In this document: positions 1 through 61,647 of the stretch, piece after piece
How positions within the stretch are numbered: the stretch's first letter is position 1
Layout: every line of letters begins with the position of its first letter
Assembly: GCA_053919585.1 (NCBI GenBank)
Contig: CM132803.1
Length of the DNA: 64,000 bases
Reading direction: 5' to 3' (one strand)
Origin: Euprymna scolopes
Taxonomy: Eukaryota
Program-made: the position numbers and the translations under genes
Notes under the pieces: model-generated
What the model was told of the DNA's origin: nothing
The model's database searches: none
The model's input: the letters and a program-made list of their open reading frames with translations, nothing else

Positions 1-1145
1 TCATCAGCTGTCAAGATAAAGGATCTCCTCCACTGCAAAGTAAGAGTAAGTTCTCCATCAAAGTCACCGATGTGAATGATGTAAGGCCACAGTTCTCTAT
101 GGAGACATTTAAGTTCTTGATTGAAGAGAATGAGAAGTCGAGATTTTCTGTTGGCTTCATCAATGCAACAGACCCAGACCTGGGAGTTGGAGGGAAACTC
201 ACCTATTCTCTGCTCACAAATAACAAACAGTTTTTACCTTTCAAAATCAAAGATGATGGCATGATTTCAGCTATTATGTCACTGGATCATGAGTTTCAAA
301 ACATTTACAAGTTTCAAGTATTTGTGAAAGATAATGGAATCCCATCTCTCAATAATACAGTCAACGTCATTGTTGAAGTGACTGATAAAAATGATAATGC
401 TCCGTATTTTACATTTCCCAGTGTCAATCCTTATAACATGGATGTTGTATATTACCGGCATCATTCAAAGAACATCACTTGTGTAAAGGCAGCTGATGGA
501 GATAGTCAAGAGAATGCATTTCTAAAATATGAAATAATCAGAGGCAATGACAAGCAGATGTTCACCATCAACCAGTACACTGGTTTGTTAACTTTCAATC
601 GGGCACTTGCGCAACAAGACGCTGGTTCCTATGAGCTAGTGTTTGTTGTCAAGGATAGTGGTAGTCCAGTTCTATCAGCAACAACTAGTATGTTTTTCAC
701 TGTGACTGTAAGCAACAAGACATCAGAAATGCTAAGTGCCGTTCATACAATCACTGAAGATAAAGTTGATCTTACATCAGTCATTATTATTACAGTTGTA
801 GCAGTGACAGTAGCAGTCATCATTACTGCTTCAATCTCGGTATGTATCATTCGCTGTAATGATCAGAGAAATGTCACATATGCCCATGCAATGGCACCAG
901 CTAATGTGGGTGTTGTTGGTCCAAGTGGCAGATATATGAGTGATCAGAGACATTTGATGTGTCCTTCAAAGCAAGGAATATCTTGGCCAACTGCTGTCAA
1001 TATAAATAAAAGTCAAGCAGATAAAATAAGAAATGCACATATAAACCAAACCAGCAGAGAATCTCATCCTGCAGAAAAGCTTCCCAGTCAGCAACAAAGA
1101 TCAGCTTCTCTTCCGCAGACACATTTGATTTCTGATTCACATCAG
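1..1145 (+). CDS. Protocadherin P1, 3' part of large exon (end of EC4, EC5, EC6, TM, juxtamembrane tail); 5' truncated by window
   Basis: Cadherin motifs DVNDVRPQF, ATDPD, LDHE, DKNDNAPYF; TM VIIITVVAVTVAVIITASISVCII; phase-0 donor CAG|GTTTG at 1145/1146. Confidence 0.93.
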
Positions 1146-1451
1146 GTTTGTGTTTTTGTTTGCATTTTTAAACAATTCTTCTGCCATTTATTATATATTT
1201 AAAATTGTGAACATTTTAATATTTTTAATTCTTTGGTAGTATTTATAATTGATAATGTTTTCATTTGTGGTTTTATGTCTAATTTCATGATTATAATGAT
1301 AATTTTACATTTTCACATAAAAATTCACTTTGATTAAAAATTTTCTTCAAATAACCTTTTCCCATTTTTTAAATTTAATTTTAAAATTTATCTCTTTTGT
1401 CATTGGAAATATAGGAAATATTATTTTTTAACTTTCTATTCATAACAACAG

Positions 1452-1608
1452 AATGATAATGAAACAATATCTATAAATAGTTCAAAGCCTACACAGCATC
1501 AAGTTGGTTCTTCTGAATATCTTAATCACCCTTCACCAAAATTGTCAAGAACTGGTAGTGGATGTAGTAGAAAAGAAACTACTACCAAACAAGTGGAAGA
1601 CATTTCAG
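1452..1608 (+). CDS. P1 cytoplasmic exon 3 (NDNETISINSSKPTQHQVGSSEYLNHPSPKLSRTG...EDIS)
   Basis: caacAG acceptor, g|GTATGA donor, open frame, 157 nt (phase 0 to 1), EYLNHPSPKL homologous to exon 3 of paralogs. Confidence 0.85.
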
Positions 1609-2652: not shown

Positions 2653-2924
2653 GATTATATGCTTCCCAGTACTGCAATTCTCCATCAAAACGAAGAGGGC
2701 AACGATCACAAGAAACAGAGATGAGGCCATTGGGACAGACTGTCAACTACCCAAGTGATACAACCATTGTGGCCAGGGGATTCTACACACCAAGCCTTTC
2801 ACAAAACAATGATAACAAAGACTCTGTGGCAGAAGATAGTAATTCTTCTGATATAAGTCAGCAATCAGTTGGAAATATTTATAGAAATCCAAGACCCTTA
2901 CCACCTGTACCACATCAAAGCTAG
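2653..2924 (+). CDS. P1 terminal cytoplasmic exon 4 (..LYASQYCNSPSK...RNPRPLPPVPHQS*)
   Basis: tcAG acceptor in phase 1, in frame with exon 3; near-identical to exon 4 of the other genes. Confidence 0.88.
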
Positions 2925-3906
2925 CTTTTCCTAATATATGATACATAAAGCATGATAAAGATTGTTTACATTTCATATTTATAAAATATAAACTTGTCAA
3001 GTAATACCTATCAAATAAATCTTGTTCATTATTTAAATATAGTTAAATGAAAACATACTAAATTTAGTAAAAGATATTCCTGCTATAAAATATAATAGTT
3101 TTGAGTATTAGACTTTCAAATAAGCCTTGAGTTGAAAAATTAAAAAAATAAATAAAAAACTCATACAATTTGATTGTTTGCAGTAATGCCAAAGAATCCT
3201 AATGGATTCTTATCTTGCTTCTATTTACACTTCAATAAAATCTAAATAATCTATGTATTATTTATAATATCAGAAAACATCTCATGTGTATGTGGTTTTT
3301 TTTTTGTTGATACATAAGATTACATGATTATGTATTATTTATTATGTTATTTTTTATTTATTATTAATCAAATATTACAATTAAAAATAAAATAAGGAAA
3401 ACTGAAACAAATTTAATAAAATTCTGTTAAAAACAAGATTGTAGTGAATAAATAGTTTTTGCTAAATCTTCAGCCTGACAATGTATTACCATCTGGAGAA
3501 TATCAAGTAAATAGAGCTAGTAAATTTATTTAAAAAAAATCACATTATTATAAAAAATAAAACTGATAAAAGAAAATACTAATACATATATAATAGGGCA
3601 GTCCATAAAGATATTCTTCAATGGATAAATAAAATAATGAACACAACTTTAAAATAAGAGATCATACTTAGCTTGAAATTAAGTGTTGTATTCAAATAAC
3701 ATTTTCTCCAAGTAATAATTTATGCCTAAAGGTAAATTTAATTTTCATGATATGATAAAATTATTTTAATTTCCTGTCATTTTTATCATATAATACTTAA
3801 AACTAGAAGCGAGCAGCAATTTTAAAACAAATATTTGACACTTTAGTATTTAAAAAGATAAAGGAATGAAAAAAGCAAATGTGGATAAGTAGCTAGGAGT
3901 TTAAAT

Positions 3907-4255
3907 GCATCATGAGAGTCAAAATAGTATTTTTCTACTTTTAATATTTTCAAGAAGGATATGAATAACTGTGTGTTAATCTTTAAACCATTTATAATAG
4001 TAGTCATATATAAATAAAAAATTGATTTAGATATACTAAAACATATTCTCTGTATGAAACAAAACAATCATCAAATACTGTAACAGCCATTGCATACGCA
4101 ACATATTAATTAGGACTACTGCTTCATTTCTCTCACCAACATCCATTTGTAATAAATAGCTTCCAAACAATAAAAAAACACAAAAAACAGTTGCAATACA
4201 ATATACCAGATATAGTTTGCATCTTCATAAATCTGCAGTGAATTGTACAATAAAG
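3907..4255 (+). promoter_or_regulatory. Degenerate promoter module and non-coding exon 1 of pseudogene psiA
   Basis: GCATCATGAGA (3907-3917; others GCATTTTGGGA), TGTAACAGCCATT-N20-AGGA at 4079, donor AAG|GTAAG at 4255/4256. Confidence 0.65.
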
Positions 4256-4484
4256 GTAAGATTATTTGATAATTTTCTTTTCATTTATGACACATGTAGA
4301 AATTAAATGATGGAGATTCATGTAAAAAAATAGAAGACATTATTAATCAATTCATTTTTATTTTTGTATGAAAACGAATTGTACATTCTTTTATTACTAT
4401 TTATTTTCAAGTATAAAACTATAGTTTTAAATTATCAATAGCATAATTAAGTACAGATTTCTTAAATACTACAGCTTTAATTTG

Positions 4485-4847: not shown

Positions 4848-7652
4848 TAATTTCTGTTATGGAATGTGATTGTAGGTTTAATTTTTTATTTTTTAGAATG
4901 CAGTAAAACATACATTTGCTAAATTCAAAATACATGGTATTTGTATTAAAAAAGCAACAACCTGGAAATTAATAATCTCCAATTAAATTTTTAGTTTTTA
5001 GCTTTTACTTAAACATAATGCGAACATTTTAAACAAAATGGCTGCCTCACAAGAACTATTCGCATAACGCTTAAGATATTAACATAACCGAGAACAGTAA
5101 AATGTTTTTAAGAATTTCTTGCACAGTTACTGACAGCATTGAAATCTTTAAAGTTATTTTAAATATCAGCTCTCTTTAAAAAGTAAAAATAATATTAAAA
5201 GTCTAAATGTAAAAGAAAACTATCATTTTAGAATAACTATCTTAAGAACTGATTGTTTGTTATGTTTCTTTGAGTGCTTGCCTTTTGAACAATCTTCTCA
5301 ATTCAATTATTAAAAAAAATTATGTACAGAAATTTACACAATACAACATCAGATAAAATTCTATTAAGTATTTTATCTAGTTGTTAAAAGAAAAAATTCC
5401 CTGTAATAACTTTTCAAGTTATTTCTGAATTAATCTTAAAATGTTTTATGCTATTTTAATTTGATCAGGCAACTTGTTCCAAATATATATTACTCTGTTA
5501 GTAAAAAAAGATTAATTGTTTAATAAATTTAGTTTTTGAAATTTGTTTGAACAGTAATCTTCCAGATAAATAAGAAAAAAAAGTTACCACTATAGTTAAA
5601 AATGTCATCAGAGTTTGAAATGTTATGTATTTGAAAGTTGAAATTAAATTAATTTTCAATCTTCTGCACTTTTTGTCGGAATCCTTTGAACTGGTGAGAT
5701 AACAGTATTCAAAGCAGTGCTAACACTTATTTATATATATTAAATTGCTTTTCTATCCTCTCTGGAATAACTGTCTGTTCATGCCTACATGTCTATAGCT
5801 TAATCTAGTTGCTTATTTTTTAACAATCTTTCAGGCATATAGTTTGATTCTAATTAATTTATAAAAGTATGCCTGATTTGCTGTTGGAAGTCTGAATCAG
5901 TATTTTAGATTTCTAATCCCTCATTTGGTGATGGGCAGGTGGCAGCTAATGCAGGACGAGCAAAAATTGTTTTTTCTTTACATAAAAATTCAGTCCAGAA
6001 TGTCCATGGTACTTTCATAAGTTCCATAATGAAAAATTTTATAAATTGATATTGTAATGTGATGTACTAACAAGTTTATTCGTTTTAGTATTAGATGAAT
6101 TGTTCTACAATATTTCCAGACATTAGTAGAATTTGAGTCTGTAGAGTTCAAGTGCAGTCATTTGATTTCAAACATTTATCCATAATTATATATATTTAAT
6201 AAATTGTAATTAGAAATGTGTTTAGCTTAATAAGGCTTAATTGAACACAATAATGTTTGTGACCATAATTCTAAACATTATAATGTATTTATTTTATATT
6301 TAAGAAAGATGAGAGGGGAGGTAATTGGTTGTTTTAATATCTTTCTGACTTCAATATTATATTCCAATTTACATGTCTAGATGTTGATGACCATGCCAGA
6401 GTACAATACTTTATTTTAGTACCTTAGTGTTTTACATATTTTTAAAACAACATTTGGTTCACTTAAAATATTTCAAACCATCCATCTAATCATTCCATTT
6501 TTCTGTAATATAACTGTATAAATGCAGTTTTTATTAAAAGTAAATAATGTTTAATTTTTTTTTTTTATTGATATACTAGCATGACCTGTGTCTCTGCATT
6601 GCCTGGGAAAAAGTGTAAGCCCCCAAAATAAAATTGCAAATTAGTTGACCTTATGACAAAAGTCACATCATACACCTAAGAAATAAGATCCCAAAAAACT
6701 GTTAATGTCTTTTTTACCACGAGCAATGTCACAACTTTACTTTATGTGTACACATTAATATAATTTTTCTAAATATGATCCAAAAAATTTTGGTGAAGAA
6801 GGGAGGGATAGCTTAAATAAAAGAAATAATACCAAAGGTTCTGTGTTGCGGTGGGAGTAGAGATACAGTTTTAATTAATTTAGTAATTAGATAATTTTTT
6901 AAATAGTTTTTTAAAAGCTTTTGTGGGAATAGGGAGAGGCCTGATAAAAAAATGCTGGTACTAAATAGCTCCTAAAACTTTCCATATTTTAATATATGCA
7001 TGTTTTGCTAAAAATTTTAAAGCCAGTAAGAAAGTTTTCTATTACATAATTTAAATGTTTTCAATTTCCTTTAAAGTTTCTTTTAAAATTATTAACAAAA
7101 GAAGAATATTTAAATGACTAATATTTTGAGCCTGAGTGATGATGTGTGTTAGTAGGGAGTGGAGGGGATGCCTTTGTTTATAATTTTCATTTTATAAGGA
7201 TATCAGACCAGCAACCACAAGGTTGCTAAAATTATTTGTAGAGCACAAATTCTAGAAAATAAACCAGTATCTGTAAATAGAAGTATTTGTTATATTATAA
7301 TCAAAACAAATGCTGAATAGAAATATAATAAAAACAATAGTTAATTAGTGAAATTTTCTTTTACAAATAAGTTAATATTACAATATGGATGGCATATGCT
7401 TTAGCAGTATGTCAGAAAGGTTCGTTTCTGCAATGTAAAAATTAAAATAATGTTTCAAGTTCACTGTTAGCAAGAGCTATCACAACTTTATATGTACAGA
7501 TTAGAGTAAATCTTTAAAAAAAAATTTTTTTTATTTTTTTATTATTTCATACTTGAAATCTATTTTTTGACTTACTGTTTTTTTGTTTGATATTTAAAAA
7601 AATGCATTGTGGAGATATGAAAATTTGATAAACCATATCTTGAATAGCAAAC

Positions 7653-10010
7653 ATGTTTTTACAAACAAATATCACTATCTCTATTTAATACATATGTGAA
7701 GCTACAGATTTGACGTTTAAAATACATGAATGGATAAGTCCTGGCACTTACCTTGAAGACATTGCTGCCGATTCTAATGTGATGGATGATGTGGCCATAT
7801 AGGATCAAAATCTCATTGCAATCAGTCTTATGGAACAGGATGAAACAAGCAGCTTTCAATTATTCTGCGTTTCTAAAAATACAGGAAACTTTTATAGAGC
7901 AAAAACATTGGATGCTGAATCTTTATGCATATTTGAAAAAAGAATGTTTTCTGATGGTAAATATTGCTGTTCAAAGAGTACATACAATAAGCAGAATATT
8001 AAAAATCAAAGTAATAATTGAAAATGTAAATCAACCAGAATTTCCAAATAAGCAAGTTAATATTGAATTTTCAGAAGACGATGGCAAAGGGATAAAACGT
8101 ATGATCTCAAATGCAGTAGATAAGAATATTGAATACATTAATTTTCAGATTATCTAGAAATTAAAAAAATATAAAGATGAAACATTTGGTTTAACTAAAA
8201 TGTAGATCGAACAGCTGATCTGTATATTATCTTAAAAAAAGATTGAACAGAGAAGTGAAAGAAAGCTACATGGTAAAAGTCATTGCTAAAGATGGTGGAC
8301 CCCCTTCCCTATTTTCACGTGTGACTGAAAACCCAAATATCTATGCATTATATTGCCAATCTTATCAAAACCCTTGATTCCAGAAAAGCAACTGATCCTG
8401 ATGGCATTCCAGTCACAGTACTCAAAAACCAAACTAACTCTCATACTTACAAATCTTTTTAAATGTTGTCTTACGGAGAAATGCTTACCAACACCTTGGA
8501 AAACTTCATCAGTAAGATGTATTGAAAAATTCTCGAGATCGATCATCTGCCCCTCACCCCAGTACAGACCAATCAGTATCCTGTACGTCATGAGTAAGTT
8601 GCTGGACTCTGTGATAAATAGAGAAGTGGTCAACCTCCTCAGCAAAAATAACCTATTCGGTGACATGCAATATGGTTCATGTTTTGCTAGATGTATAGCT
8701 GATGTGCCAGCTGTAATATCACACAAGATTAGTGAATCTCTTGACAGGGGCTTTGTTTCTAGAGCAATTGCTCTTGACATATCAAAGCCTTTTGATAATA
8801 TATAGCATAATAGTCTACTTCACAAGATTTTCAGCTGTGGAATAGCTGAAAAGTCCTCCCAATTATTAAATCCTTTCTCTCTCATAGGTTTATCATCCTG
8901 GGTCCAACTCTTTGTGATCTTCATCAATGAACTTCCAAATCACATTCTTAGACAACACTACCATCTATGGCAACACTTCAAAGGTCAACAATATCATCCA
9001 GAATAACCAAGATCTCTTTGATTCTCTCTGTACTGATCTTGAGCATGTGATGCAATAGAGAAAAGGTGGTTGATTAATTTTAATGTATCTAAAACCAAGC
9101 TTCTCTCTTTCCATCATAAATGTTCTGACCCCCCATCTAACCAACTGAAATGAATGGCTCCCATCTTGGGGAAGCACCATATTTTGACAAGCTTGTTGAA
9201 CTTATGTTCACTTCTGATCTGAAATGGAACACATGCATCAAATCTGTTGCCAAGATTGTCGGAAAAATGGTTGGATTATTCTACTGCTCTAGTAGATATC
9301 TCACTGCTGATGCAATCCTCTAACTGTATAAGAGCAAGGTATATTCTAGGATGCGAGCCTGTCTTTGTTCTATCATTATTTTCATGACAAGTACTTATCT
9401 GAGCTTCAAATTTTCACAAAAAACACTTGTCTAGCTACAACCACTATCAACAATTTCCACCACTTTATTTGTGCCTAAATCTAAACACAAATTCTATGAA
9501 CAAAGCTTCTTACCTAGAACTATCCATCTGTTCTGCTGGACTGCTTTGCGGCTGACTACAATATGATCACCTTCATATCCAATATAAAAAAGTTCTTGTT
9601 GAGCCATCCACTTAAATAATCAAATTATACCCAATTTCCAACACTATCTATTACTATGCTGTCCTGGTTATTACTGTATACTCATTAACCCTGATTAGTG
9701 ACCTTCGGACATTGACCAAACCTTGTTAAAAAAAAAATAAAAAATAAAAAAAAAATAAATAAATAAAAATAAACAAGTATTTTAGATGTTCACATTTCAG
9801 TTGCAGATGTGAATGATAATCCTCCTGTCTTCTCACAAAATTTTTATAATGTCACAATCAAAAATGAACCAAGTGAAACTTCTTCTATTGCAACTTTATC
9901 TGCCACAGATTTAGTTTATATACTGAAGCTAGAGATGAGGGTAGTTCTCCTTTGAATTCTCTTGCTATGATTTTGGTAAACTTCAGAAGTGCTCATATAA
10001 ACTAAACCAG
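7653..10010 (+). pseudogene. Protocadherin pseudogene psiA (EC1-EC2, LINE insertion, EC3 remnants, fragment of tail)
   Basis: Frameshifted and stop-containing homology to paralogs; EC2 (NIEFSEDDGKGIKRMISNAVDK) closest to P3; interrupted at 8308-9769; large deletions after ~9915 and ~9981. Confidence 0.9.
8308..9769 (+). mobile_element. 5'-truncated, decayed non-LTR retrotransposon (CR1/Jockey-group LINE, RT region to A-rich tail)
   Basis: YRPISIL, QYG, ALDISKPFD and GP-LF-IFINELP RT motifs; A-rich tail 9728-9769; Pcdh sequence resumes exactly (CCTTC|TAAACAA). Confidence 0.88.
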
Positions 10011-10114
10011 GTAAATTTTAAAATAAAAATGAGGAGATAAAATATAAGTTTTCAATACTTTAATGAAAGCTAAAAATTCAAATTTACTTAAATTTATTTA
10101 TTTTTTTATTTCAG

Positions 10115-13100
10115 TTACGATAAAATTGAATTCATCAGATTCTTTCCAGAAGCAATCATACATAAAAATGATAGTATTAACATTTTTGATATTTCTACAC
10201 ATTTGTCATGGTGTGGATTTATCATTTGAATTGAAGAAGGTAAAAGTTCTGGCACTTACCTTGGAGACATTGCTGCTGGTTCTAATGTGATGGATGATGT
10301 GGCCATACAAGATCAAAATCTCATTGCATTCAGTCTTATGGAACAGGATGGAACAAGCAGCTCTCCATTATTCCGGATTTCTAAAAATACAGGAAAACTT
10401 TATACAGCACAAACATTGGATGCGGAATCATTGTGTACATTTAACAAGGAATGTTTTGTGATGGTTGATGTTTAAAATAAAATGAACACTGGACAGATTT
10501 TTTTAGAAAAGAAATTTACATTGAGTAATGCATTAACACATAACTTGTAGGTGTTCGATGTGGAAACAAAAGATATGTATGAAGGTGCAACAAGATGTTG
10601 GTTCCTATGAGGTAGTGTTGGTTATCAAGGATAGTGGTAGCCCAGTTCTATCAGCAACAACTAGTATGTTTTTCATTATGACTGTAAGCAACAGAACATC
10701 AGAAATGCTAAGTGCCGTTCATACAATCACTGAAGATAAAGTTGATCTTACATCAATCATTATTATTACGGTTGTAGCAGTGACTGTAGCAGTGACTATT
10801 ATTGCTTCAATTTTGGTATCTATTATTCGATGTAATGATCAGAACAATGTCACATATGCCCATGCAATGGAACCAACCAATGTGGGTGTTGTTGGTCCAA
10901 GTGGAAGGCATATGAGTGCTCAGAGCTATTTGATGTGTCCTTCAAAGCCAACTACTATCAATGTAAACAAAAACCAAGCATATAAAATCAGGTGCTCATA
11001 TAAACCAAATCAGCAAGCAATCCCACATGGCAGAAAACCTTCCCAATCAACAACACAGATCGGCTTCCTTGATACAAACACAAATGTCTACTGAAGCAGA
11101 TCTACAGGTTTGTTTCTATTTATATTTCTTGCTGTAAAATTTTAATAATTTTTTTGTAAATCCCTTTTTAGCTAGGATCAAAACTAATCGACAAACTCAC
11201 CCACCTCGATATGGCTAGAGAAACTGGTTGTGAAAGTATATAGTGCAAAGCTTTGACCATTGTTTTAAACCATACTTTTGTAAATGCATTTCCTTTCTGT
11301 ATTGTTTAGTGATGGCAGTGTTACAAGTAAATATGATAAAAATACCTAAAAAAAAAGGTGGATAAAAGTAGCAAGTTTGTGTGTATGAAAAGGAACAAGT
11401 ACTAGAATGTGCTCCTACCTGAGCACGGTGCACATAGTTTCTGGTCCTCTCAAACCCTAGTCCTTCGGGTAAGTTTAACTTCTTAGCTAGATGGATAAAT
11501 GAATCCCCCATCCTTCCTGGTATTAGAGGTCGAGATCCTCCAAGGCGCCCATTCACAAATTCATCTTGGAAGGACACCATCCACTCTCCCAAACCACATT
11601 CCTATTTCTTTTTTTCTCACTTAGAGATTGTGCTTTCAGTTCTGAACAAATCAGAAAACCATGGGGAGTCTATTATTTAGAAAGGGTTGGAAGATGGGGG
11701 TTGCGAATTATTTGTTTTTGTTTTCCTATTTCCCATTTTATCCCAATAAGTTTGTGTTTATAAATATCTTTATGAAAAATGAAATTTAAAAAAATTTGAA
11801 GATGCCTAAAGTAAGATGGTCCCTAGAATAAATATAATATTGGGGTGATTGAGATCATTCCAGTTCAGAGTTGGATAGACAATTTTATCACTTTTAGCCC
11901 AAGAATGACCAACGACTAATTTCCCCTATACTTTTTATGACGCTGTGCCTAATTTGTTACATTGTATATTTTTTACTTGATAACAAATAAATAATCCAAA
12001 GTATTTGTCCTGATACAACACTCCATCTTTTCTTCTAAACGACTACAATTTTTTTACTATTTTCCCAATCCAGAGTCTTTTTAAGGAGCTAGATTTTCTC
12101 TACATTAAAAATCAACCTTATATATAACTCTGACCTCATGAAAAGGCAAGCAAATAGGAACCCCAAAGAAACATTTCATATTATTTAATAATTTTCAATA
12201 ATGTTTTGTATAATTACTAGTTAATTTGATCTAATTTTATTTGATTAATCTATATTTTTACTGTATATAATAATTATTTTATATTATTTTTTGAATTTAA
12301 AATACTCAAATTCCTCAATATCATTTGTTATTTTATCGTGACTAGCATGAAGTTAAATCATTAACTGAAAGCATCCAAAGTAAATCAGCAATTTACAACA
12401 AACCATCCCCAAAGATGACAAGAAAGGAAACTTCACAAAATAGAAGTCGGACTAATATACAATGTGATTAAGGAACAGGTAAGAAGAAGTTTTTGTTTTT
12501 AATTTTTTACAAATACAAATTTTAATTCATAACAAATGTATATATCAAACTTTTGTCACATTTTCATTATAAAAATAACATAATTTTTATGACTTCAAAA
12601 ATGTTTTTATCATTAGCTAAATCATTTTATCTATATTATTAATTCAATTTCATTTCCTATCAAGCAAAAAGCATTTAACATTGTATTTCCATCATAAAGT
12701 TTCTGTTTTTTTTCTGAATGAAACAAATTATATTTAATTCATTTTTGTTTCAATATGATTTAATATTTATTTTATTGCATTTTCTAACTAAAATTTAATT
12801 ATATAAAGCAATAAAATGAAATCAAAATGCAAATGAATTTTTTAATGATTTCTAAGTTTATCTCTAAATATTTTTAACGTTTTTTAAATTTATTTCTAAA
12901 TATTTTTAATGTTTTCTAAGTATATTTCCAAATATTCATAATATATATTTTTTTTATTATTAGTATGCTCTTTTGCTTTTGTATTTCAAGAGATGTTTAC
13001 TTCCCAGTACTGCAATTTTCCAAAACAAAGACGGCTGCCAGCACAAAAGACAGAGATGAAGCCAATGGGACAGACTGTCAACTTCCCAAGTGATACAACC

Positions 13101-47825: not shown

Positions 47826-47976
47826 CCAATTCACTCTTTGGAACTGAACTCAAGAAGTAAAACTTACCAAACAAGTTCTCAAGAATATCTCAATCATCCT
47901 TCCCCAAAATTGACAAGTGCTGATTGTAAAAATAGCAGAAAAGGGGCCAACCTTAAACAGGACTATGAAGTTGGAG
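47826..47976 (+). CDS. P5 cytoplasmic exon 3 (PIHSLELNSRSKTYQTSSQEYLNHPSPKL...YEVG)
   Basis: tttAG acceptor, g|GTAAGT donor, 151 nt open frame. Confidence 0.86.
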
Positions 47977-50282: not shown

Positions 50283-50504
50283 GTAAGTACATTTAATCAT
50301 TCTGTTTTTTGTTTGGATGTCAACGACATATAGGAAAATGCATTCTAGTCTATACTTCCCAGTACTGTAATTTTCCATCTTGCTAAACATTTGATATAAG
50401 AAAATTTTGATTTAAAGAGTGTGAATTTATAAATTTATAAACTGCATATTTTAATATTATTTTCTTTATACTTCTAAATATTTGTAGACAGTTTGTTATT
50501 AATA

Positions 50505-50677: not shown

Positions 50678-51096
50678 GAACTGTTAGATAAACAAACATG
50701 ATGGAAAATACATTTCTAATATATCGATTTTTTTAATATGGTTTATGCTTTGAAGCAATATTAAATATAATTTAATTCTAGATATAATGTAAAATTCACA
50801 TAAAATTTCATTTATAATTGTAAGAAAAATGTTTAGCCTTCTAATAGAAGTCAGAAATTGTATTTTATAAATAATATTTTAAACATTGCTTTAAGATGTA
50901 AATTGATAAAAAACATTTTAAAATATATATATGAAAAATATTGTTTAAAAAAGATTGAATTCTGATCAAATTTGAATAAGAATTTAATAAGAATTCAAAT
51001 TTTATGGAAATTTACAGCTTATAACAAAATTTGTTTTAAATTTCAGGGTCGAACTGCCACATATCTTAAAAAGGAATCTGATTTCACTACAAAAAT

Positions 51097-53535
51097 ATGT
51101 TGATTCAAATATGGATTCTGCTCTCATTCCTACACATTTGTAATAGTGTAGATTTGACATTCAAAGTTGAAGAAGGTAAAAGTCCTGGCACTTACCTTGG
51201 AGACATTGCTGCCGATTCTAATGTGATGGATGATGTGGCCATACAAGATCAAAATCTCATTTCATTCAGTCTTATGGAACAAGATGGAACAAGCAGCTCT
51301 CCATTATTCCGGATTTCTAAAAATACAGGAAAACTTTATACAGCACAAACATTGGATGCTGAATCTCTGTGTACTTATGGAAAAGAATGTTTCTTAATGG
51401 TTGATGTTGCAGTTCAGAAATCTAAAAGGATTATGAAAATTTTAGAAATCAAAATAATAATTGAGGATGTAAATGATCATCAACCAGAATTTCCTGATAA
51501 ACAAGTGACCGTTCTGTTTGAAGAAAATTATAAAAAAGGAACACAAGTTTTAATTCCAAATGCTATTGACAAAGATATTGGAGATATCAATTCACAAATA
51601 ACTTATGATCTTAAAAAATATAAAGATGAACCATTCGGGTTATCTGTTTCAAAAAATGTTGATGGCACATCAGACTTATATATGATACAAAAGGAGAGCT
51701 TAGACAGAGAAGTGAAAGAAAGCTACATGGTAAAAGTCATTGCTAAAGATGGTGGATCTCCTTCTAAACAAAGTATTTTAGATGTTCACATTTCAGTTGC
51801 AGATGTGAATGATAATCCTCCTGTCTTCTCACAAAATCTTTATAATGTCACAATCAAAAATGAACCAAGTGAAACTTCTTCTATTGCAACTTTATCTGCC
51901 ACAGATTTAGATTCTGGTAAAAATGGAAGAGTCACTTATCATTTCAGTACAAAAACATCTGATGTTGCTAAAAGTCATTTTAAATTAAATCAACAAACTG
52001 GACAGATTTTCTTAGAAAAGAAATTTACATTGAGTAACATGCTGACTTATAACTTATTTGTGGAGGCTACTGATGGTGGCAATCCTCCCTTAACAGCTAA
52101 ATCAATGATCATTGTAAATGTTGTTAATAATCAAAATAATCCACCAACAATTCATCTAAAATTTTTGGCAGCATCTGGAAAAGATTCAACATCTGTTTCT
52201 GAAAACATTGAGGTGGGAAGTTCCATTGCATATGTAAAAGTGACTGATCATGATGTTGGACAAAATGGAGAAGTGAGTTGCAATCTGCATTATGATAAAT
52301 TTAAACTACAAAGTCTCGACACTAAGAAATACCAAGTAATTGTGAAAAAAGCATTGGATAGAGAAAGAGAGGCAAAGCATGAAATTATTATCAGCTGTCA
52401 AGATAAAGGATCTCCTCCACTGCAAAGTAAGAGTAAGTTCTCCATCAAAGTCACCGATGTGAATGATGTAAGGCCACAGTTCTCTATGGAGACATTTAAG
52501 TTCTTGATTGAAGAGAATGAGAAGTCAAGATTTTCTGTTGGCTTCATCAATGCAACAGACCCAGACCTGGGAGTTGGAGGGAAACTCACCTATTCTCTGC
52601 TCACAAATAACAAACAGTTTTTACCTTTCAAAATCAAAGATGATGGCATGATTTCAGCCATTATGTCACTGGATCATGAGTTTCAAAACATTTACAAGTT
52701 TCAAGTATTTGTGAAAGATAATGGAATCCCATCTCTCAATAATACAGTCAACGTCATTGTTGAAGTGACTGATAAAAATGATAATGCTCCGTATTTTACA
52801 TTTCCCAGTGTCAATCCTTATAACATGGATGTTGTATATTACCGGCATCATTCAAAGAACATCACTTGTGTAAAGGCAGCTGATGGAGATAGTCAAGAGA
52901 ATGCATTTCTAAAATATGAAATAATCAGAGGCAATGACAAGCAGATGTTCGCCATCAACCAGTACACTGGTTTGTTAACTTTCAATCGCGTGCTTGCGCA
53001 ACAAGATGCTGGTTCCTATGAGCTAGTGTTTGTTGTCAAGGATAGTGGTAGCCCAGTTCTATCAGCAACAACTAGTATGTTTTTCACTGTCACTGTAAGC
53101 AACAAGACATCAGAAATGCTAAGTGCCGTTCATACAATCACTGAAGATAAAGTTGATCTTACATCAGTCATTATTATTACGGTTGTAGCAGTGACTGTAG
53201 CAGTCATCATTACTGCTTCAATCTCGGTATGTATCATTCGCTGTAATGACCAGAGAAATGTCACATATGCTCATGCAATGGCACCAGCCAATGTGGGTGT
53301 TGTTGGTCCAAGTGGCAGATATATGAGTGATCAGAGACATTTGATGTGTCCTTCAAAGCAAGGAATATCTTGGCCAACTGCTGTCAATGTAAACCAAAGT
53401 CAAACAGATAAAATAAGAAATGCACATATCAACCAAACCAGCAGAGAATCCAATCCCACAGAAAAGCTTCCCAGTCAGCAACAAAGATCAGCTTCTCTGC
53501 CACAGGCTAAAACCCAATTACAAGCTGAATCTAAA
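51097..53535 (+). CDS. Protocadherin P6 large exon
   Basis: Acceptor at 51046; 6 EC plus TM; donor AAA|GTAAGT at 53535. Confidence 0.95.
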
Positions 53536-53870: not shown

Positions 53871-54027
53871 CCTCATGTCCATGATGAGTCAATGATCCCT
53901 AAAAATCTTCAAAATGAACAAGCTAGTTCAATTGAATATCTCAATTATCCCTCTCCAAAATTATCACGTACCAATAATAAACAGAGGAGAAATGATACAA
54001 ACATAAGACAAAATGAAACTATTTCTG
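53871..54027 (+). CDS. P6 cytoplasmic exon 3 (PHVHDESMIPKNLQNEQASSIEYLNYPSPKL...ETIS)
   Basis: caacAG acceptor, g|GTAAGA donor, 157 nt open frame. Confidence 0.87.
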
Positions 54028-55639: not shown

Positions 55640-55905
55640 ATGATTATGCTTCCCAATACTACAATTCACCATCAAAAGAAAGGAGACCACCAGGACAAGA
55701 AACAGAGATGAGGCCATTGGGACAGACTGTCAACTATCCAAGTGATACAACCATTGTGGCCAGGGGATTCTATACACCAAGCCTTTCACAAAACAATGAT
55801 AACAAAGACTCTGTGGCAGAGGATAGTAATTCTTCTGATATAAGTCAGCAGTCAGTGGGAAATATTTATAGAAACCCAAGACCCTTACCACCAGTACCTC
55901 AATAA
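55640..55905 (+). CDS. P6 terminal exon 4
   Basis: tttAG acceptor in phase 1; DYASQYYNSPSK...RNPRPLPPVPQ*. Confidence 0.88.
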
Positions 55906-56552
55906 TATTTATAAAAATCAAATTATGTAAATATAGATTTATTAAATTTTCATATTTGAGGAACTACTACTTATTTTTTAACTAGGTACGATTTAAAATG
56001 AGCTTCATTCAAAGTTGAAAATATCCAGTCTTCAAAAGCTTCATATTCAATAATTTTTTTGTGTAAATTATTCCATTATTCATATTGAAATTTCTTTATG
56101 GATATTATAATCTACTATTTATAATTACTAGTTCTCATATTGTATTCAATTCTATATTAAGTTTACTGAGTCCCAACAAATGCCAGCATGTACAGATTAA
56201 ACCAAATATAATGAAGATAATAAATATAAATAATCTTTTAATTAAAATTGTTTTATTTTATATATATATATAATTTCAGTGATTAAACATAATTAAAAAT
56301 ATATTAATTTTTAAACTTTTGATTCTGAAAAGAAAAACTTATCTCAATTAGTGTAGAAATTATTAATTAAAAACACTATACTTCTGAAATATGTTTACAA
56401 TATAAATTTTATTTCTCTCTAAACAATAAGACTGTATATTTAAATTTTAAAAAGAATACAATTTTAATATACTTACGTTACCAGGTTGATGTAATATTTA
56501 AGGTGAACCGTTATAATGTCAGCAGACAAAAGGGGAGATAATAGATTTTAAA

Positions 56553-56932
56553 GGACAAAGAACTGAACTAACAGAATGCATTTTGGGAATAAAAAAATTA
56601 TTTTAATATTTTTAATTTTAAATATTACCATAGGTTTTATTTTTTAGTTTGCAAATATTCGAAAGAGTCTTTTTAAAAAAATTAGATAATTCTAATCTAA
56701 TCCAATGAAATTTCATACCTCATTGATGAATAGTAGTCATCTCCCACTGTAGCAGCCATTGTTCACACAACACACTCATTAGGATTACTTCTTTCGACAT
56801 CACATCAACATGAGGAGGAACATGAGAATCTTTACCTGGATGTAATTCATAAGAAATAAATTTCTGCAAATGTATCAGAGAATAAAATGTGGATTTAATT
56901 CATTTGAAATACAGAAATACCAATAAAAAAAG
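56553..56932 (+). promoter_or_regulatory. P7 promoter module and non-coding exon 1
   Basis: GGACAAAG 56553, GCATTTTGGGA 56578, TGTAGCAGCCATT 56748-56760, donor AAG|GTAAGA 56932/56933. Confidence 0.8.
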
Positions 56933-59190
56933 GTAAGATATTTCATATTTTGTGTATTTTTAGTACAAATATTGTGACAGTTGAATATGTGCCTATAAGC
57001 GAATATCATTGTTTTTTGCTTAGTGCTTTTGTTAAATATTGTCTAATAATTATTTTTTACAGCAATCACTGATTCTAAATATTCACAGTATTAGTAAAAC
57101 AAAAGTGATTTTATTGGTTTTAATAAAACAATCTAAGTTGCCTAGTAATAACAAATTAGATACCAGAAAATGCATACAGATAGTGAATCATCTGTAATAA
57201 CAGTCAAGATGAGAACAGTAGTCCAAATAATATGGATTTGTAATTCATAGCCATTTTTAAAAAAAATAATTTTTAATGAAATTCAGTAGATAATCTTTAC
57301 AATATAATGAAGCTCAATATATATATATATATTTTACGCTGAAAAAATATTTTTATTTATAAAAAATATATTGATAAATTGATATTGATATATTGATAAC
57401 TCAAATATCCTTCTATTTTAAAATATTTACATTTTTAATTTAACCAATATTTTTATATCAGTTATATTATAAAAAGAAGTATTTGGGAATATGTTGAACG
57501 TACACATCTGTTAAACCTAAATGTAAAAATTGAGTTATGAATTCTTATAAATATATTTTTGTGAGTGGGTGTTATTTTGCAACTGTTTTTAAATTTAATT
57601 GAATCAGTTATAGTTGATATGTATATAATTTTGTCTATATAAATATTCAAATTCTCAGTTAGTCTATTTTGAGGTTAATTTCTGTTTTAAATGAAATGAA
57701 AAGAACTGATTTTTTTTATTATTATGAATTCAAAATATTTAAATATTTTTCAGTTTGCTTAACATAAAATTCTGAATCAGTTTTATTTTTGTAGTCATGT
57801 AATACCTTGATTAGAGATTTTAAAAAGCAATATAAACATCCCTTCTCCAATAGAAACCTTATATTTACTACTACCAGTTTTGAAACTGAAGCTGTTACTA
57901 GCTTTAAATTTATATTGTTAAACATTGTTTTCAGATTTTACTCTTTAATAATAGATATGTGTGTGCATGTAAAATTAAAAATATAATTTAACAATATAGA
58001 TTTAAAGCTTATAGTAATTACTACTACTAATTTTTATAGCAACGTGTAGGTAGTACAGAAAAAAATTACTTAAATAAAAAAGTGTGCGTCCATATATAAA
58101 TAACAAAGAAAAGGGAGATAACTCTAGCAAGTAAGCATTACTGCAACAAAGAAATTTCTATAAGATATAAATTTAGTTTTAAATTTTATTTTTCTTACAT
58201 TTTTACATTTCAGTTTTCTCTGTTTAAATGGATGTAAAAGATTTTATATTATCAAAGATAAGTTTTAAAATTATCAAAAAATGATTAAAAAGTATTACTT
58301 TACTTGTTTAAGGATGTAATATAAGAACAACTGAATACAATGACTACTTTTCTCTCTAATTTAAAGATAATTTTTGATCAACATTAATTTTAAAGCATTT
58401 TGCTTTCTTCATATTTCATCACATTTTTTAATGATTTGTACTAACCAGATGATTCAGATCTGATTCATTTAATCTTTAATTAGCTAATTAAATCCAATCT
58501 AATAAATTGTACAAAAGATAATTGAATTTTGAGCATAAATGAAATACTGTCACATTTTCTTAAAAATAAATTTATATACTCAATTTATTTCGTAATATTA
58601 AATTAAATATTTTGCATTCAAAACAAACAATGATCAAGAATTTTTCTCTAATTAAGAATTATAACTAAACTTTTTTTAATTCTTGAGTAGTCACTGATGT
58701 ATGTATTTTTAATTCTTCTTTATTATCTACATATATACTAATGCATGTGTACTTTAATTAATTTAGACTGCAGAAAGAGTTGTATATGAAATTAGTTTGG
58801 AAACATTAAATTTATTTTAAATAATCTATGAAAAGGCCTAATTAAGTAAATAGCGTATACTGTAAAGCTTTATTGATTAGAAAAAGATTACTGAAAAACA
58901 TATCAATGTGTAAAAAATTTGAAATGATATTTTTCACAATTTGTACAATTAGCAATTACATATATTATTTACCTAATAACTAATAAAAAATAAAAATCTT
59001 ATTTCTTTTTACTTCTTAAAAACTACTAAATCCTTAGAAAGTGTACTAATTTGAAAATTATTGTTTGAGTATATTTTTTTATGCATTCATACCAGTTTTA
59101 AATTATTTATGAATTAATATCAATGTCACTATTCTATTTTACAGATCTATAACAAATTTGTAGGACATCTAATTTGGTGACATCAACCTT

Positions 59191-61647
59191 ATGATATTCG
59201 TCACAAAAATGTTAACACAAACATTCTTCCTGCTTTTGATACTACATTCTGTTTACTGTATAGATCTGACATTCAAAGTCGAAGAAGGCAAAAGTCCTGG
59301 CACTTACCTTGGAGACATTGCCGCCGATTCTAATGTGATGGATGATGTGGCCATACAAGATCAAAATCTCATTGCATTCAGTCTAATGGAACAGGATGGA
59401 ACAAGCAGCTCTCCATTATTCCGGATTTCTAAAAATACAGGAAAACTTTATACAGCACAAACATTGGATGCTGAATCGCTGTGTACATTTAATAAGGAAT
59501 GTTCTCTCATGATAGATATTGCAGTACAAAAATCCAAAAGAATCATGAAGATTTTAGAAATTAAAATCATCATACTTGATGTAAATGACCATCAACCAGA
59601 ATTTCCTGATAAAAAAATAACTATTGAATTTTCTGAAGATATTGTCATGGGAACCAAAATATCAATCCCTAATGCCATTGATAAAGACATTGGTGTTATC
59701 AACTCTCAGATAACTTATGAATTGAAAAAATACAAAAATGAACCATTTGGTCTGTCTGTTTCTAAAAATGTAGACAGAACAGCTGATCTCTATATTATTC
59801 TGAAAGAAAGATTGGACAGAGAAGTTAAAGGAAGTTATATAGTAAAAGTCATTGCTAAAGATGGTGGATCTCCTTCTAAAAAAAGTATTTTAGATGTACA
59901 TATTTTAGTTGCAGACGTAAATGATAATCCTCCTGTCTTCTCACAAAATCTTTATAATGTCACAATCAAAAATGAACCAAGTGAAACTTCTTCTATTGCA
60001 ACTTTATCTGCCACAGATTTAGATTCTGGTAAAAATGGAAGAGTCACTTATCATTTCAGTACAAAAACATCTGATGTTGCTAAAAGTCATTTTAAATTAA
60101 ATCAACAGACTGGACAGATTTTCTTAGAAAAGAAATTTACTTTAAGTAATATGCGGACATGTAATTTATATGTTGAAGCTAAAGATGGTGGAAATCCACT
60201 TTTAACTGCTAAATCAATAGTTCTTGTCAATGTAATCAATCAACAAAATAATCCTCCAATCATTCATCTCAAGTTCCTGTCAGCATCCGGAAAAGATTCA
60301 ACATCAGTTTCGGAAGACATTGAGGTGGGAAGTTCTATTGCATATGTAAAAGTGACTGATCATGATGTTGGACAAAATGGAGAAGTGAGTTGCAATCTGC
60401 ATTATGATAAATTTAAACTACAAAGTCTCGACACTAAGAAATACCAAGTAATTGTGAAAAAAGCATTGGATAGAGAAAGAGAGGCAAAGCATGAAATTAT
60501 CATCAGCTGTCAAGATAAAGGATCTCCTCCACTGCAAAGTAAGAGTAAGTTCTCCATCAAAGTCACCGATGTGAATGATGTAAGGCCACAGTTCTCTATG
60601 GAGACATTTAAGTTCTTGATTGAAGAGAATGAGAAGTCGAGATTTTCTGTTGGCTTCATCAATGCAACAGACCCAGACCTGGGAGTTGGAGGGAAACTCA
60701 CCTATTCTCTGCTCACAAATAACAAACAGTTTTTACCTTTCAAAATCAAAGATGATGGCATGATTTCAGCCATTATGTCACTGGATCATGAGTTTCAAAA
60801 CATTTACAAGTTTCAAGTATTTGTGAAAGATAATGGAATCCCATCTCTCAATAATACAGTCAACGTCATTGTTGAAGTGACTGATAAAAATGATAATGCT
60901 CCGTATTTTACATTTCCCAGTGTCAATCCTTATAACATGGATGTTGTATATTACCGGCATCATTCAAAGAACATCACTTGTGTAAAGGCAGCTGATGGAG
61001 ATAGTCAAGAGAATGCATTTCTAAAATATGAAATAATCAGAGGCAATGACAAGCAGATGTTCGCCATCAACCAGTACACTGGTTTGTTAACTTTCAATCG
61101 CGTGCTTGCGCAACAAGATGCTGGTTCCTATGAGCTAGTGTTTGTTGTCAAGGATAGTGGTAGCCCAGTTCTATCAGCAACAACTAGTATGTTTTTCACT
61201 GTCACTGTAAGCAACAAGACATCAGAAATGCTAAGTGCCGTTCATACAATCACTGAAGATAAAGTTGATCTTACATCAGTCATTATTATTACAGTTGTAG
61301 CAGTGACCGTAGCTGTTATCATTACTGCTTCAATCTCGGTATGTATCATTCGCTGTAATGATCAAAGAAATGTCACATATGCCCATGCAATGGCACCAGC
61401 CAATGTGGGTGTTGTTGGTCCAAGTGGCAGATATATGAGTGATCAGAGACATTTGATGTGTCCTTCAAAGCAGGGAATATCTTGGCCAACTGCTGTCAAT
61501 GTAAACCAAAGTCAAACAGATAAAATAAGAAATGCACTTGTCAACCAAACCAACAGAGAGTCCCATCCTCTAGAAAAGCTTCCAAGTCAGCAACAAAGAT
61601 CTGCTTCCTTGCCGCAGACACAGCGAGTTACACAGATAGCATCTCAG
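59191..61647 (+). CDS. Protocadherin P7 large exon; exons 3-4 not found in window
   Basis: Acceptor at 59144; 6 EC plus TM; donor CAG|GTAAAA at 61647. Confidence 0.94.

What the first reader, a model, noticed from the sequence alone, without database searches (positions are those of the whole stretch)
1..61647. Candidate invertebrate neuronal-barcode system: full-gene protocadherin array with one stereotyped promoter per isoform and conversion-shaped ectodomains
Seen: nine Pcdh units in 64 kb on the same strand. Each intact unit has its own promoter module, non-coding exon 1, single ectodomain exon and private cytoplasmic exons. Established: vertebrate clustered Pcdhs use per-isoform promoters with a conserved element, variable exons and shared constant exons; cephalopods expanded Pcdhs independently as tandem complete genes. 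Inference: this array reaches the same logic convergently. A shared promoter grammar could allow promoter choice, and a de facto constant region is maintained by sequence homogenisation rather than by shared exons. The cephalopod expansion itself is known; I am not aware of this combined architecture being described, but I cannot check the literature.
Basis: partly seen in the sequence, partly recalled or inferred. Interest (0 to 1): 0.85.

Follow-up and report, generated by a model that had tools for sequence, protein, structure and literature searches.

The report
Squid-type protocadherin gene array
This is a head-to-tail row of complete protocadherin (neuronal adhesion) genes of a squid- or cuttlefish-like animal, each with its own conserved promoter, whose membrane-near halves are kept almost letter-identical by copying between genes; the layout is real but largely published, and the "neuronal barcode" reading is untested.

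Summary
The + strand carries nine protocadherin units. Five are complete four-exon genes (P2-P6). P7 has exons 1-2, P1 is cut by the window start, and two units are broken.

The gene models rest on sequence: canonical splice sites give open frames of 951-972 aa. No RNA junction was seen.

Each of the six genes whose 5' end lies in the window has one ~400-bp upstream module. Leave-one-out profile E-values are 2e-32 to 6e-50. A decayed seventh module precedes a broken unit.

Homogenisation is strongly supported. Synonymous divergence is about 1.0 in EC2 but 0.02-0.04 in EC5-EC6. A recombination test is significant (0 of 2000 permutations). The block is more alike within arrays than between them.

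- The constant block is EC4-EC6 plus the membrane span, not the tail.
- Exon 3 is private and saturated; exon 4 is kept mainly by selection.
- The module has no CGCT box, no CTCF-like site and almost no CpG.
- Promoter choice is untested.

Albertin et al. 2022 already describe such arrays with gene conversion. This scan noted the same block elsewhere in this genome. The promoter module and the band map appear new.

The assembly gap lies 36 nt after P4's stop codon, so no reading frame crosses it.

The parts
1..1145 (+). P1 exon 2, 3' part only (cut by the window start); EC4-EC6, TM, juxtamembrane
1452..1608 (+). P1 exon 3 (private cytoplasmic exon)
2653..2924 (+). P1 exon 4 (terminal cytoplasmic exon, ends at the stop codon)
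3881..4264 (+). Decayed promoter-like module U1 ahead of the broken unit. The proximal 12-mer has 1 mismatch at 4080, the distal box is degenerate at 3907, and the donor is at 4255.
   Evidence: held-out nhmmer hit at E 1.5e-16
7644..8305 (+). Broken unit psi-a: EC1-EC2 remnant in three frames (two frameshifts)
9770..11110 (+). Broken unit psi-b: scrambled and deleted exon-2 pieces. Some pieces are 95-98% identical to intact copies.
12346..12468 (+). Exon-3-like remnant of the broken unit
13008..13253 (+). Exon-4-like copy of the broken unit
14117..14542 (+). P2 promoter module and exon 1. Distal box 14170, proximal 12-mer 14346-14357, putative exon 1 14355-14534.
16330..18818 (+). P2 exon 2 (ATG at 16332; signal peptide, EC1-EC6, TM, proximal tail)
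21577..21739 (+). P2 exon 3
24653..24918 (+). P2 exon 4
25333..25720 (+). P3 promoter module and exon 1. Distal box 25386, proximal 25556-25567, exon 1 25565-25712.
26594..29079 (+). P3 exon 2 (ATG at 26608)
30587..30749 (+). P3 exon 3. It is 97% identical to P2 exon 3, inside an 82%-identical 750-bp block.
32951..33216 (+). P3 exon 4
33623..34016 (+). P4 promoter module and exon 1. Distal box 33676, proximal 33842-33853, exon 1 33851-34008.
35831..38329 (+). P4 exon 2 (ATG at 35876)
38822..38984 (+). P4 exon 3
41309..41574 (+). P4 exon 4
41611..41742 (.). Assembly gap in the spacer between the P4 stop codon and the P5 promoter. No coding frame crosses it.
42164..42563 (+). P5 promoter module and exon 1. 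Distal box 42218, proximal 42393-42404, exon 1 42402-42555.
44186..46653 (+). P5 exon 2 (ATG at 44218)
47826..47976 (+). P5 exon 3
49145..49410 (+). P5 exon 4
49884..50290 (+). P6 promoter module and exon 1. Distal box 49935, proximal 50108-50119, exon 1 50117-50282.
   Evidence: one RNA-run contig starts at 50117
51047..53535 (+). P6 exon 2 (ATG at 51097)
   Evidence: RNA-run depth falls to 0 after 53530
53871..54027 (+). P6 exon 3
55640..55905 (+). P6 exon 4
56529..56938 (+). P7 promoter module and exon 1. Distal box 56578, proximal 56749-56760, exon 1 56758-56932.
59145..61647 (+). P7 exon 2 (ATG at 59191). Exons 3-4 were not found in the rest of the window.

Best explanation
The window is part of a tandem sub-array of complete protocadherin genes of a decapodiform (squid- or cuttlefish-like) cephalopod.

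Each gene has four exons:
- exon 1, non-coding, about 150-180 nt;
- exon 2, about 2.45 kb, encoding the signal peptide, six cadherin repeats, the membrane span and the proximal tail;
- exon 3, a fast-evolving private exon of about 50-54 codons;
- exon 4, a conserved 88-90-codon terminal exon.

Each gene has its own promoter, built on one pattern. A distal box (ACAAAG ... ATGCATTTTGGGA) lies about 170 nt before a proximal block centred on GTAGCAGCCATT, where transcription probably starts.

The paralogs are old. Synonymous sites are near saturation in EC2, in exon 3 and in the signal peptide, and the introns are unalignable. Short-tract gene conversion confined to parts of exon 2 keeps EC4-EC6, the TM and the juxtamembrane stretch, and short bands of EC1 and EC3, nearly identical within the array. 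The end of EC1, EC2, and the EC3/EC4 boundary stay as old, mosaic cassettes under purifying selection.

Inferred and not shown: the result is a set of adhesion isoforms with different recognition surfaces on one common membrane-proximal chassis. Each isoform would be transcribed independently by a shared set of factors. Which cells use which gene, and whether that use is probabilistic, is unknown.
For: Protocadherin identity: Pfam Cadherin_2 plus 5 Cadherin domains. The best solved relatives are full ectodomains of delta-2 and gamma-B protocadherins, E 1e-85 to 1e-92. The nearest named proteins are Acanthosepion pharaonis PCDHs.

Gene models: canonical GT-AG sites, compatible phases, and ORFs of 951-972 aa with no internal stop. 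A cuttlefish annotated protein (P0123, CAE1165416.1) joins homologues of the exon-2 end, exon 3 and exon 4 in that order. RNA-assembly contigs of a more distant relative carry an exon-4-like tail after the ectodomain.

Promoter module: one per gene whose 5' end is in the window, on the + strand only, leave-one-out E 2e-32 to 6e-50. Identity is 0.70 (proximal) and 0.63 (distal) against 0.41-0.49 in the flanks. The copy ahead of the broken unit is decayed, as expected if the motif is under selection in live genes.

Conversion:
- dS by domain: EC1 0.44, EC2 1.01, EC3 0.47, EC4 0.095, EC5 0.021, EC6 0.042.
- dS by band: about 1.2 in variable bands against 0.05-0.09 in constant bands.
- PHI 0.281 against 0.382 +/- 0.006, with 0 of 2000 permutations as low.
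- The nearest paralog changes along the exon: P2=P4 in columns 176-280, P5=P6 in 326-370, P3=P6 in 101-115, and P2=P3 in exon 3.
- Protein identity in EC5/EC6/TM is 0.99-1.00 within this array and 0.95-0.99 within two other arrays. Between arrays it is 0.92-0.96 and 0.66-0.79. EC2 is as diverse within arrays as between them.
- Outside the exons and promoter modules the units do not align, apart from one 750-bp P2/P3 block and repeats.
Against: No transcript evidence for the splice junctions or the start site in this window. The only read-laying run used assembled contigs and showed no joints. Contigs over exon 1 run on into the intron, and in one run coverage upstream, in exon 1 and in intron 1 is similar. 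Most RNA contigs on exon 2 come from paralogs outside the window.

The factor assignments are consensus resemblances only. These are ZNF143/Staf or RBPJ for the distal box, and an initiator for the proximal one. The initiator consensus is from my own knowledge.

The module was not seen in the 5' UTRs of three transcripts of more distant relatives. Genomic DNA of relatives could not be fetched, so its conservation outside this window is unshown.

Polishing of a repetitive assembly could exaggerate the 100% identity of the constant block.
Confidence: 0.85

Rival explanations
1. One reading: the shared promoter grammar serves stochastic, combinatorial promoter choice. Each neuron would switch on a few of these genes and so acquire a surface barcode, as with vertebrate clustered protocadherins.
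For: One conserved promoter per isoform. Recognition-domain diversity sits on a homogenised chassis, the pattern of vertebrate clusters (zebrafish values in PMC4978886 Table 2). Protocadherins are neural in cephalopods (PMC9068888, PMC9712504).
Against: Nothing in the sequence speaks for choice rather than co-regulation. There is no CGCT box and only 2-4 CpG per 531-nt module. The window has no CTCF-like consensus. No distal enhancer or antisense promoter was identified. Octopus single-cell data give about 19 PCDH genes per cell, some ubiquitous and some cell-type markers (PMC9712504). That looks at least partly deterministic, and it concerns octopus, not this lineage.
Confidence: 0.12
2. There is no conversion. 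The array arose by very recent tandem duplication, and the variable bands diverged quickly under diversifying selection.
For: Nucleotide identity of exon 2 is high overall, 90-96%.
Against: The variable bands have saturated synonymous sites (dS about 1.0-1.2) and dN/dS about 0.1, which means purifying rather than diversifying selection. Introns and spacers between units are unalignable. Relationships change along the exon.
Confidence: 0.03
3. The constant block is kept by selection on the nucleotide sequence itself, without copying between genes. One possible cause is RNA structure needed for the heavy A-to-I editing of coleoid transcripts.
For: From my own knowledge, not checked here: coleoid editing is reported to constrain sequence around edited sites, and protocadherin transcripts are reported to be heavily edited. 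dN is also about 0 in the block.
Against: The same block differs between arrays. Protein identity between arrays is 0.92-0.96 and 0.66-0.79, against 0.95-1.00 within each array. The residues are therefore free to change but change together, which is concerted evolution. No known constraint gives 100% identity over 675 nt in six old paralogs.
Confidence: 0.05
4. The conserved ~400-bp module is not a promoter. It could be a 3'-end or terminator element of the upstream gene, or a fragment of a mobile element carried along with each unit.
For: It lies only 626-844 nt after the upstream stop codon. RNA-run contigs cross it from upstream in two runs. There are no TSS data.
Against: An AAG|GTRAG donor follows at 148-180 nt in 7 of 7 copies, and a matching acceptor lies just before each ATG. 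There is exactly one copy per gene, and none elsewhere or on the other strand. It is decayed ahead of the dead unit. One contig begins exactly at the A of CCATT.
Confidence: 0.08

Closest known systems
Cephalopod tandem protocadherin sub-arrays (Albertin et al. 2015; Albertin et al. 2022, PMC9068888; Styfhals et al. 2019, PMC6339937)
   Same: Closely related, multi-exonic, complete genes in one transcriptional direction. Pseudogene fragments lie between them. Homogenisation by gene conversion has been proposed. There are no shared final exons.
   Different: Those papers, as far as the passages I read show, give no per-gene promoter motif and no domain-resolved conversion map. Here both are given for one 64-kb stretch of an unidentified decapodiform genome.
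Vertebrate clustered protocadherins (alpha, beta, gamma), especially the zebrafish Pcdh2ab group
   Same: There is one large ectodomain exon per isoform, each with its own promoter carrying a shared element. EC2-EC3 are old and diverse, and EC5-EC6 are homogenised by gene conversion. Zebrafish dS is EC3 2.91, EC5 0.12 and EC6 0.01 (PMC4978886 Table 2); here it is EC2 1.01, EC5 0.021 and EC6 0.042.
   Different: No constant exons are shared; each gene has private exons 3 and 4. The promoter element lies 1-2.4 kb before the ATG, behind an intron, rather than about 200 bp before it. It has no CGCT box or CpG. No CTCF-like site was found. The tail has no Pfam Cadherin_tail or Cadherin_C_2 match. 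The expansion arose independently (PMC9068888).
ZNF143/Staf binding site SBS1 and the RBPJ site (Ngondo-Mbongo et al. 2013, PMC3627581)
   Same: The reverse complement of the distal box reads YTCCCAAAATGCATT. It shares TTCCCA..ATGCA with the SBS1 probe TTCCCATTATGCACCGCG and contains the RBPJ heptamer TTCCCAA in three of the six genes.
   Different: The 3' CCGCG part of SBS1 is absent. No binding was tested, so this is a resemblance only.

Membership tests
Protocadherin (non-classical cadherin) | N-terminal Cadherin_2 repeat followed by further cadherin repeats, six EC in all | tested here: met
   Pfam Cadherin_2 plus 5 Cadherin stretches in all six full ORFs. Four DxNDxxP linkers were matched at fixed columns; the EC3/EC4 linker reads NQQNNPP. 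Full-length match to six-EC ectodomain structures 6vg1, 6e6b and 6vg4.
Protocadherin (non-classical cadherin) | Single membrane span after EC6, and most of the protein encoded by one large exon | tested here: met
   One hydrophobic 21-mer peak at alignment columns about 707-732. Exon 2 is an uninterrupted 2.44-2.49 kb ORF.
Protocadherin (non-classical cadherin) | No classical-cadherin catenin-binding cytoplasmic domain | tested here: met
   No cytoplasmic Pfam family at E up to 1 in exon 3, exon 4 or the exon-2 tail.
Vertebrate-type clustered protocadherin system | Variable exons spliced to shared constant exons | tested here: not met
   Every unit has its own exons 3 and 4, with compatible phases. 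Exon 3 differs at dS about 1.3 between units.
Vertebrate-type clustered protocadherin system | Each isoform exon has its own promoter with a conserved element | tested here: inconclusive
   One conserved module per gene is shown. Promoter activity and the TSS are not shown.
Vertebrate-type clustered protocadherin system | CSE with a CGCT box about 200 bp upstream of the ATG, bound by CTCF | tested here: not met
   No CGCT in any module and only 2-4 CpG per 531 nt. The module lies 1.0-2.4 kb before the ATG. There are 0 CTCF-like consensus matches in 64 kb. The CTCF consensus is from memory, so that test is weak.
Vertebrate-type clustered protocadherin system | Gene conversion homogenising EC5-EC6 while EC2-EC3 stay diverse | tested here: met
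   The dS gradient runs from 1.01 to 0.021, a ratio of about 48. PHI test. Identity within arrays exceeds identity between arrays.
Vertebrate-type clustered protocadherin system | Stochastic, combinatorial promoter choice in single neurons, and isoform-specific homophilic binding | not testable with these tools
   Needs single-cell long-read RNA and cell-aggregation assays.
Cephalopod tandem PCDH sub-array (Albertin et al. 2022) | Closely related, multi-exonic, complete genes in the same direction, with pseudogene fragments | tested here: met
   description in PMC9068888.
Cephalopod tandem PCDH sub-array (Albertin et al. 2022) | Nearest relatives are coleoid, here decapodiform, protocadherins | tested here: met
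   The best named hits are Acanthosepion pharaonis PCDHs, 60-63% identical over the ectodomain. The exon-4 tail is 77% identical to A. pharaonis CAE1165416.1.

The most novel reading that the evidence does not exclude
The conserved two-box module would be the handle of a promoter-choice mechanism that evolved independently of the vertebrate one. That mechanism would work without CTCF or the CSE, and without CpG methylation. One candidate factor is a ZNF143/Staf- or RBPJ-like protein at the distal box. Neurons would then express sparse, variable subsets of these genes, giving a second, mechanistically different origin of a protocadherin neuronal barcode.
Probability: 0.12. Interest if true: 0.85.

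Novelty: new member of a known kind. Interest (0 to 1): 0.45.

Why it matters
Cephalopods and vertebrates expanded protocadherins independently, and both have large brains. This window shows at base resolution that the parallel goes beyond copy number.

The same split appears in both lineages: old, diverse EC2-centred recognition cassettes, and a conversion-homogenised EC4-EC6/TM chassis. The contrast in synonymous divergence is about 48-fold, close to the zebrafish extreme.

The window also supplies a concrete, testable regulatory element. The ~400-bp two-box module is present once per gene and lacks CpG and CTCF-like sites. It could be used to ask how cephalopods decide which protocadherins a neuron expresses, through reporter assays, ATAC or CUT&RUN, and searches of other arrays and species.

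The general architecture and the idea of conversion are already published. The added value is therefore detail and a handle for experiments, not a new kind of system.

Tried and rejected
- RNA support for the splice sites. It gave depth on exon 2 and a sharp drop at the predicted donor, but no joints. Most loose ends do not match this window, so those contigs belong to paralogs elsewhere.
- Genomic DNA of the closest relatives, to test the promoter module in other arrays or species. Nothing was returned because the samples' files are too large.
- Transcripts of more distant relatives (L001, L003-L006). Their 5' UTRs do not contain the module's transcribed part.
- Search with the exon-4 peptide against 1.84 billion representatives. 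It found mostly short ORF fragments. One cuttlefish model joins the three coding exons. The one 950-aa hit is an unrelated repeat protein.
- Rfam and tRNA scans for the extreme RNA depth at 50330-50729: nothing found. The sequence looks like a retroposon with an A-tail.
- The bacterial-type promoter and terminator scan is not applicable to this organism and was disregarded.
- Noonan et al. 2004 could not be read. Its content was taken only as cited in PMC4978886 and PMC6339937.
- Orthology of variable cassettes with the 12 closest database proteins gave no clear one-to-one pairs.

Full report
WHAT IS THERE

The window is AT-rich (GC 0.21-0.35). On the + strand it carries six long ORFs of 829-839 aa, plus one ORF that runs in from the window start. 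Every long ORF has a Cadherin_2 domain followed by five Cadherin domains.

A tblastn search with one paralog finds nine units in all:
- the truncated copy, P1 (3-1181);
- two broken copies: 7644-8305 in three frames, and 9776-11110 with pieces out of order and large deletions;
- six intact copies, P2-P7.

The ectodomain matches solved six-EC protocadherin ectodomains of both delta-2 and clustered gamma type at E 1e-85 to 1e-92. The nearest named database proteins are PCDHs of the cuttlefish Acanthosepion pharaonis at 60-63% identity. The organism is therefore a decapodiform cephalopod. I could not identify the species.

GENE STRUCTURE (FROM SEQUENCE)

A self-comparison shows that similarity between units is confined to three coding blocks and one upstream block. 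Introns and spacers do not align, apart from repeats and one P2/P3 block.

- Exon 2 starts at a polypyrimidine-AG acceptor 2-50 nt before the ATG. It ends at an aligned GT in phase 0.
- Exon 3 is 151-163 nt and runs from phase 0 to phase 1. It lies 0.3-2.8 kb downstream of exon 2.
- Exon 4 is 266-272 nt and begins with the two bases that complete the split codon. It ends at the stop codon.

Joining the three coding exons gives open frames of 951-972 aa for P2-P6, and an open 523-aa C-terminal part for P1. P7 reaches its exon-2 donor at 61647. Its exons 3-4 are not in the readable remainder.

There is indirect support for this exon order. An annotated cuttlefish protein (P0123, CAE1165416.1) runs continuously through homologues of the exon-2 end, exon 3 and exon 4. 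RNA-assembly contigs of a more distant relative have an exon-4-like tail after the ectodomain.

Direct support in this window is lacking. In four RNA runs, depth covers exon 2 and falls to zero at 53530, five bases before the predicted donor. No splice joints were reported, and much of that depth belongs to paralogs elsewhere.

THE PROMOTER MODULE

The exact 12-mer GTAGCAGCCATT occurs six times, each 1.0-2.4 kb before one intact ATG. A one-mismatch copy lies at 4080.

About 170 nt upstream of each 12-mer lies GCATYTTGGGA, preceded in five genes by ACAAAG. An AAG|GTRAG donor follows 148-180 nt downstream of the proximal block in all seven copies.

In all six genes the inferred 5' UTR has an in-frame stop before the main ATG, so exon 1 is non-coding.

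Leave-one-out profiles recover each module at E 2e-32 to 6e-50. The held-out seventh copy scores E 1.5e-16. Nothing else in the window, on either strand, scores better than E 0.28.

Identity is 0.70 in the proximal block and 0.63 in the distal block, against 0.41-0.49 in the flanks. The seventh copy, ahead of the broken unit, has a degenerate distal box. That fits relaxed constraint once the gene is dead.

One RNA-run contig starts exactly at the A of CCATT (50117). It then runs on into the intron, and other runs cover the upstream spacer too, so the start site remains inferred.

The reverse complement of the distal box (YTCCCAAAATGCATT) shares TTCCCA..ATGCA with the ZNF143 SBS1 probe. In three genes it contains the RBPJ heptamer TTCCCAA (PMC3627581). 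This is a resemblance, not a test.

The module has no CGCT box and only 2-4 CpG per 531 nt. The window has no CTCF-like consensus.

HOMOGENISATION

In a codon alignment of exon 2 of P2-P7, alignment columns 401-625 are 99.1-100% identical at all positions. Columns 151-225 and 326-375 are 69-79% identical, with third-position identity of 0.52-0.61.

Synonymous divergence by band:
- variable bands 101-275 and 326-385: about 1.2 and 1.1, with dN/dS about 0.1;
- constant bands 46-100, 276-325 and 386-775: 0.07, 0.09 and 0.05.

Synonymous divergence by domain: EC1 0.44, EC2 1.01, EC3 0.47, EC4 0.095, EC5 0.021, EC6 0.042, TM 0.11, proximal tail 0.34.

The nearest paralog changes along the exon:
- P3=P6 in columns 101-115;
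- P2=P4 in columns 176-280;
- P3, P5 and P6 group together in columns 221-280;
- P5=P6 in columns 326-370.

A PHI test on 264 informative sites gives 0.281 against 0.382 +/- 0.006. None of 2000 permutations was as low.

The decisive control against pure selection compares arrays. Protein identity in EC5, EC6 and the TM is 0.99-1.00 within this window. It is 0.98-0.99 within the closest database group and 0.95-0.97 within a third group. Between groups it is only 0.92-0.96 and 0.66-0.79. EC2 is about 0.7 both within and between groups.

The block is therefore free to change, but it changes in concert within an array.

Exon 3 is saturated (dS about 1.3, dN 0.46), except between P2 and P3 (dS 0.06). 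Those two share an 82%-identical 750-bp block around it. Exon 4 is intermediate (dS 0.43, dN 0.07) and carries two alternative internal cassettes.

Conversion tracts therefore lie inside exon 2. The cytoplasmic tail is not the main homogenised part.

THE ASSEMBLY GAP

The Ns at 41611-41742 begin 36 nt after P4's stop codon and lie before P5's module. No frame crosses them and the order of parts is kept.

The stop-to-next-promoter distance, with the estimated gap length, is 819 nt. It is 626-844 nt for P2, P3, P5 and P6, and 1156 nt for P1.

Because the gap falls exactly between units, missing whole units cannot be excluded. I did not try to fill it.

COMPARISON WITH WHAT IS KNOWN

Albertin et al. 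2022 (PMC9068888) report for squid, bobtail squid and octopus:
- fragmentary pseudogene-like reading frames;
- homogenisation through gene conversion;
- diversity by full gene duplication instead of shared final exons.

Styfhals et al. 2019 (PMC6339937) also mention conversion.

The vertebrate precedent for domain-restricted conversion is explicit. Zebrafish Pcdh2ab has dS of 2.91 in EC3, 0.12 in EC5 and 0.01 in EC6 (PMC4978886 Table 2).

Earlier notes of this scan report the same constant block in other windows of this genome (s1-244837, s1-295510). They also report a fixed promoter element ahead of seven genes 371 kb away (s1-288450). I did not test those.

My literature searches found no description of a cephalopod PCDH promoter motif. 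That is an absence in a limited library, not proof.

FUNCTION

Shown:
- a family of six-EC adhesion receptors with old, selected variation centred on EC2 and on the EC1/EC2 and EC3/EC4 borders, on a common chassis;
- one conserved upstream module per gene.

Inferred: independent transcription of each gene from that module, and isoform-specific recognition through the variable bands.

Untested: stochastic choice. The only single-cell data I found are for octopus. They report about 19 PCDH genes per cell, with both ubiquitous and cell-type-specific members (PMC9712504).

VERDICT

The homogenisation inference is right in kind, but it concerns the ectodomain and TM block rather than a cytoplasmic constant region. 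The barcode and promoter-choice reading is a hypothesis without support in the sequence. The architecture is largely published.

Noticed in passing
window 50530-50680 (intron 1 of P6): A retroposon-like element ending in an A-run. RNA-run word depth over 50330-50729 reaches about 33,000, against tens to hundreds on the exons. There is no Rfam or tRNA match, so it is probably a high-copy SINE-like repeat.
   Followed up: partly
window 26157-26216, 42034-42106, 55133-55233, 63611-64000: The same simple repeat recurs in several spacers. It also flanks the two further assembly gaps at 63476-63610 and 63678-63925.
   Followed up: no
window 19842-20568 and 39370-40123: Copies of one element, 87-91% identical, in direct and inverted orientation. 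They sit in different introns of P2 and P4, and 39964-40123 is self-complementary. This is probably a transposon family.
   Followed up: no
window 9770-9917 (broken unit psi-b): This pseudogene piece is 95-98% identical to P3, P5, P6 and P7 in a band where intact genes differ by up to 40%. The dead copy was either converted recently or could serve as a conversion donor.
   Followed up: partly
window 21204-21944 vs 30212-30964: This is the only long non-coding similarity between units: 82% over about 750 bp around exon 3 of P2 and P3. Yet exon 2 of P2 is closest to P4, and exon 4 of P2 and P3 is among the most divergent pairs (dS 0.66). It is a local exchange tract.
   Followed up: partly
spacers after each exon 4, e.g. 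window 33217-33841 and 49411-50107: Only 626-844 nt separate the stop codons of P2-P6 from the next gene's proximal promoter block (1156 nt for P1). Read-through into the neighbour is therefore plausible. Octopus annotators reported read-through fusions of PCDH genes (PMC9712504).
   Followed up: no
exon 4 of all units, e.g. window 24653-24918: The tail ends in RPLPPVP and carries the conserved stretches YCNSPSK and GQTVNYPSDTTIVARGFYTPS. Related tails (PRPLPPVPQLLY) occur in more distant RNA-assembly proteins (P0130, P0133). No Pfam family matches.
   Followed up: partly
L001 (Acanthosepion pharaonis RNA contig) and its gene: A 1211-aa cuttlefish protocadherin of another subfamily is confirmed by an RNA contig. 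Its annotated gene spans 73.5 kb, and its long tail has repeated SDYLEP motifs. Other cephalopod PCDH subfamilies therefore have quite different tail architectures.
   Followed up: no
window 52037-52157: RNA contigs in three runs match on both sides but carry a diverged 119-nt stretch of the same length. This is a different variable cassette from a paralog, seen directly in RNA.
   Followed up: no
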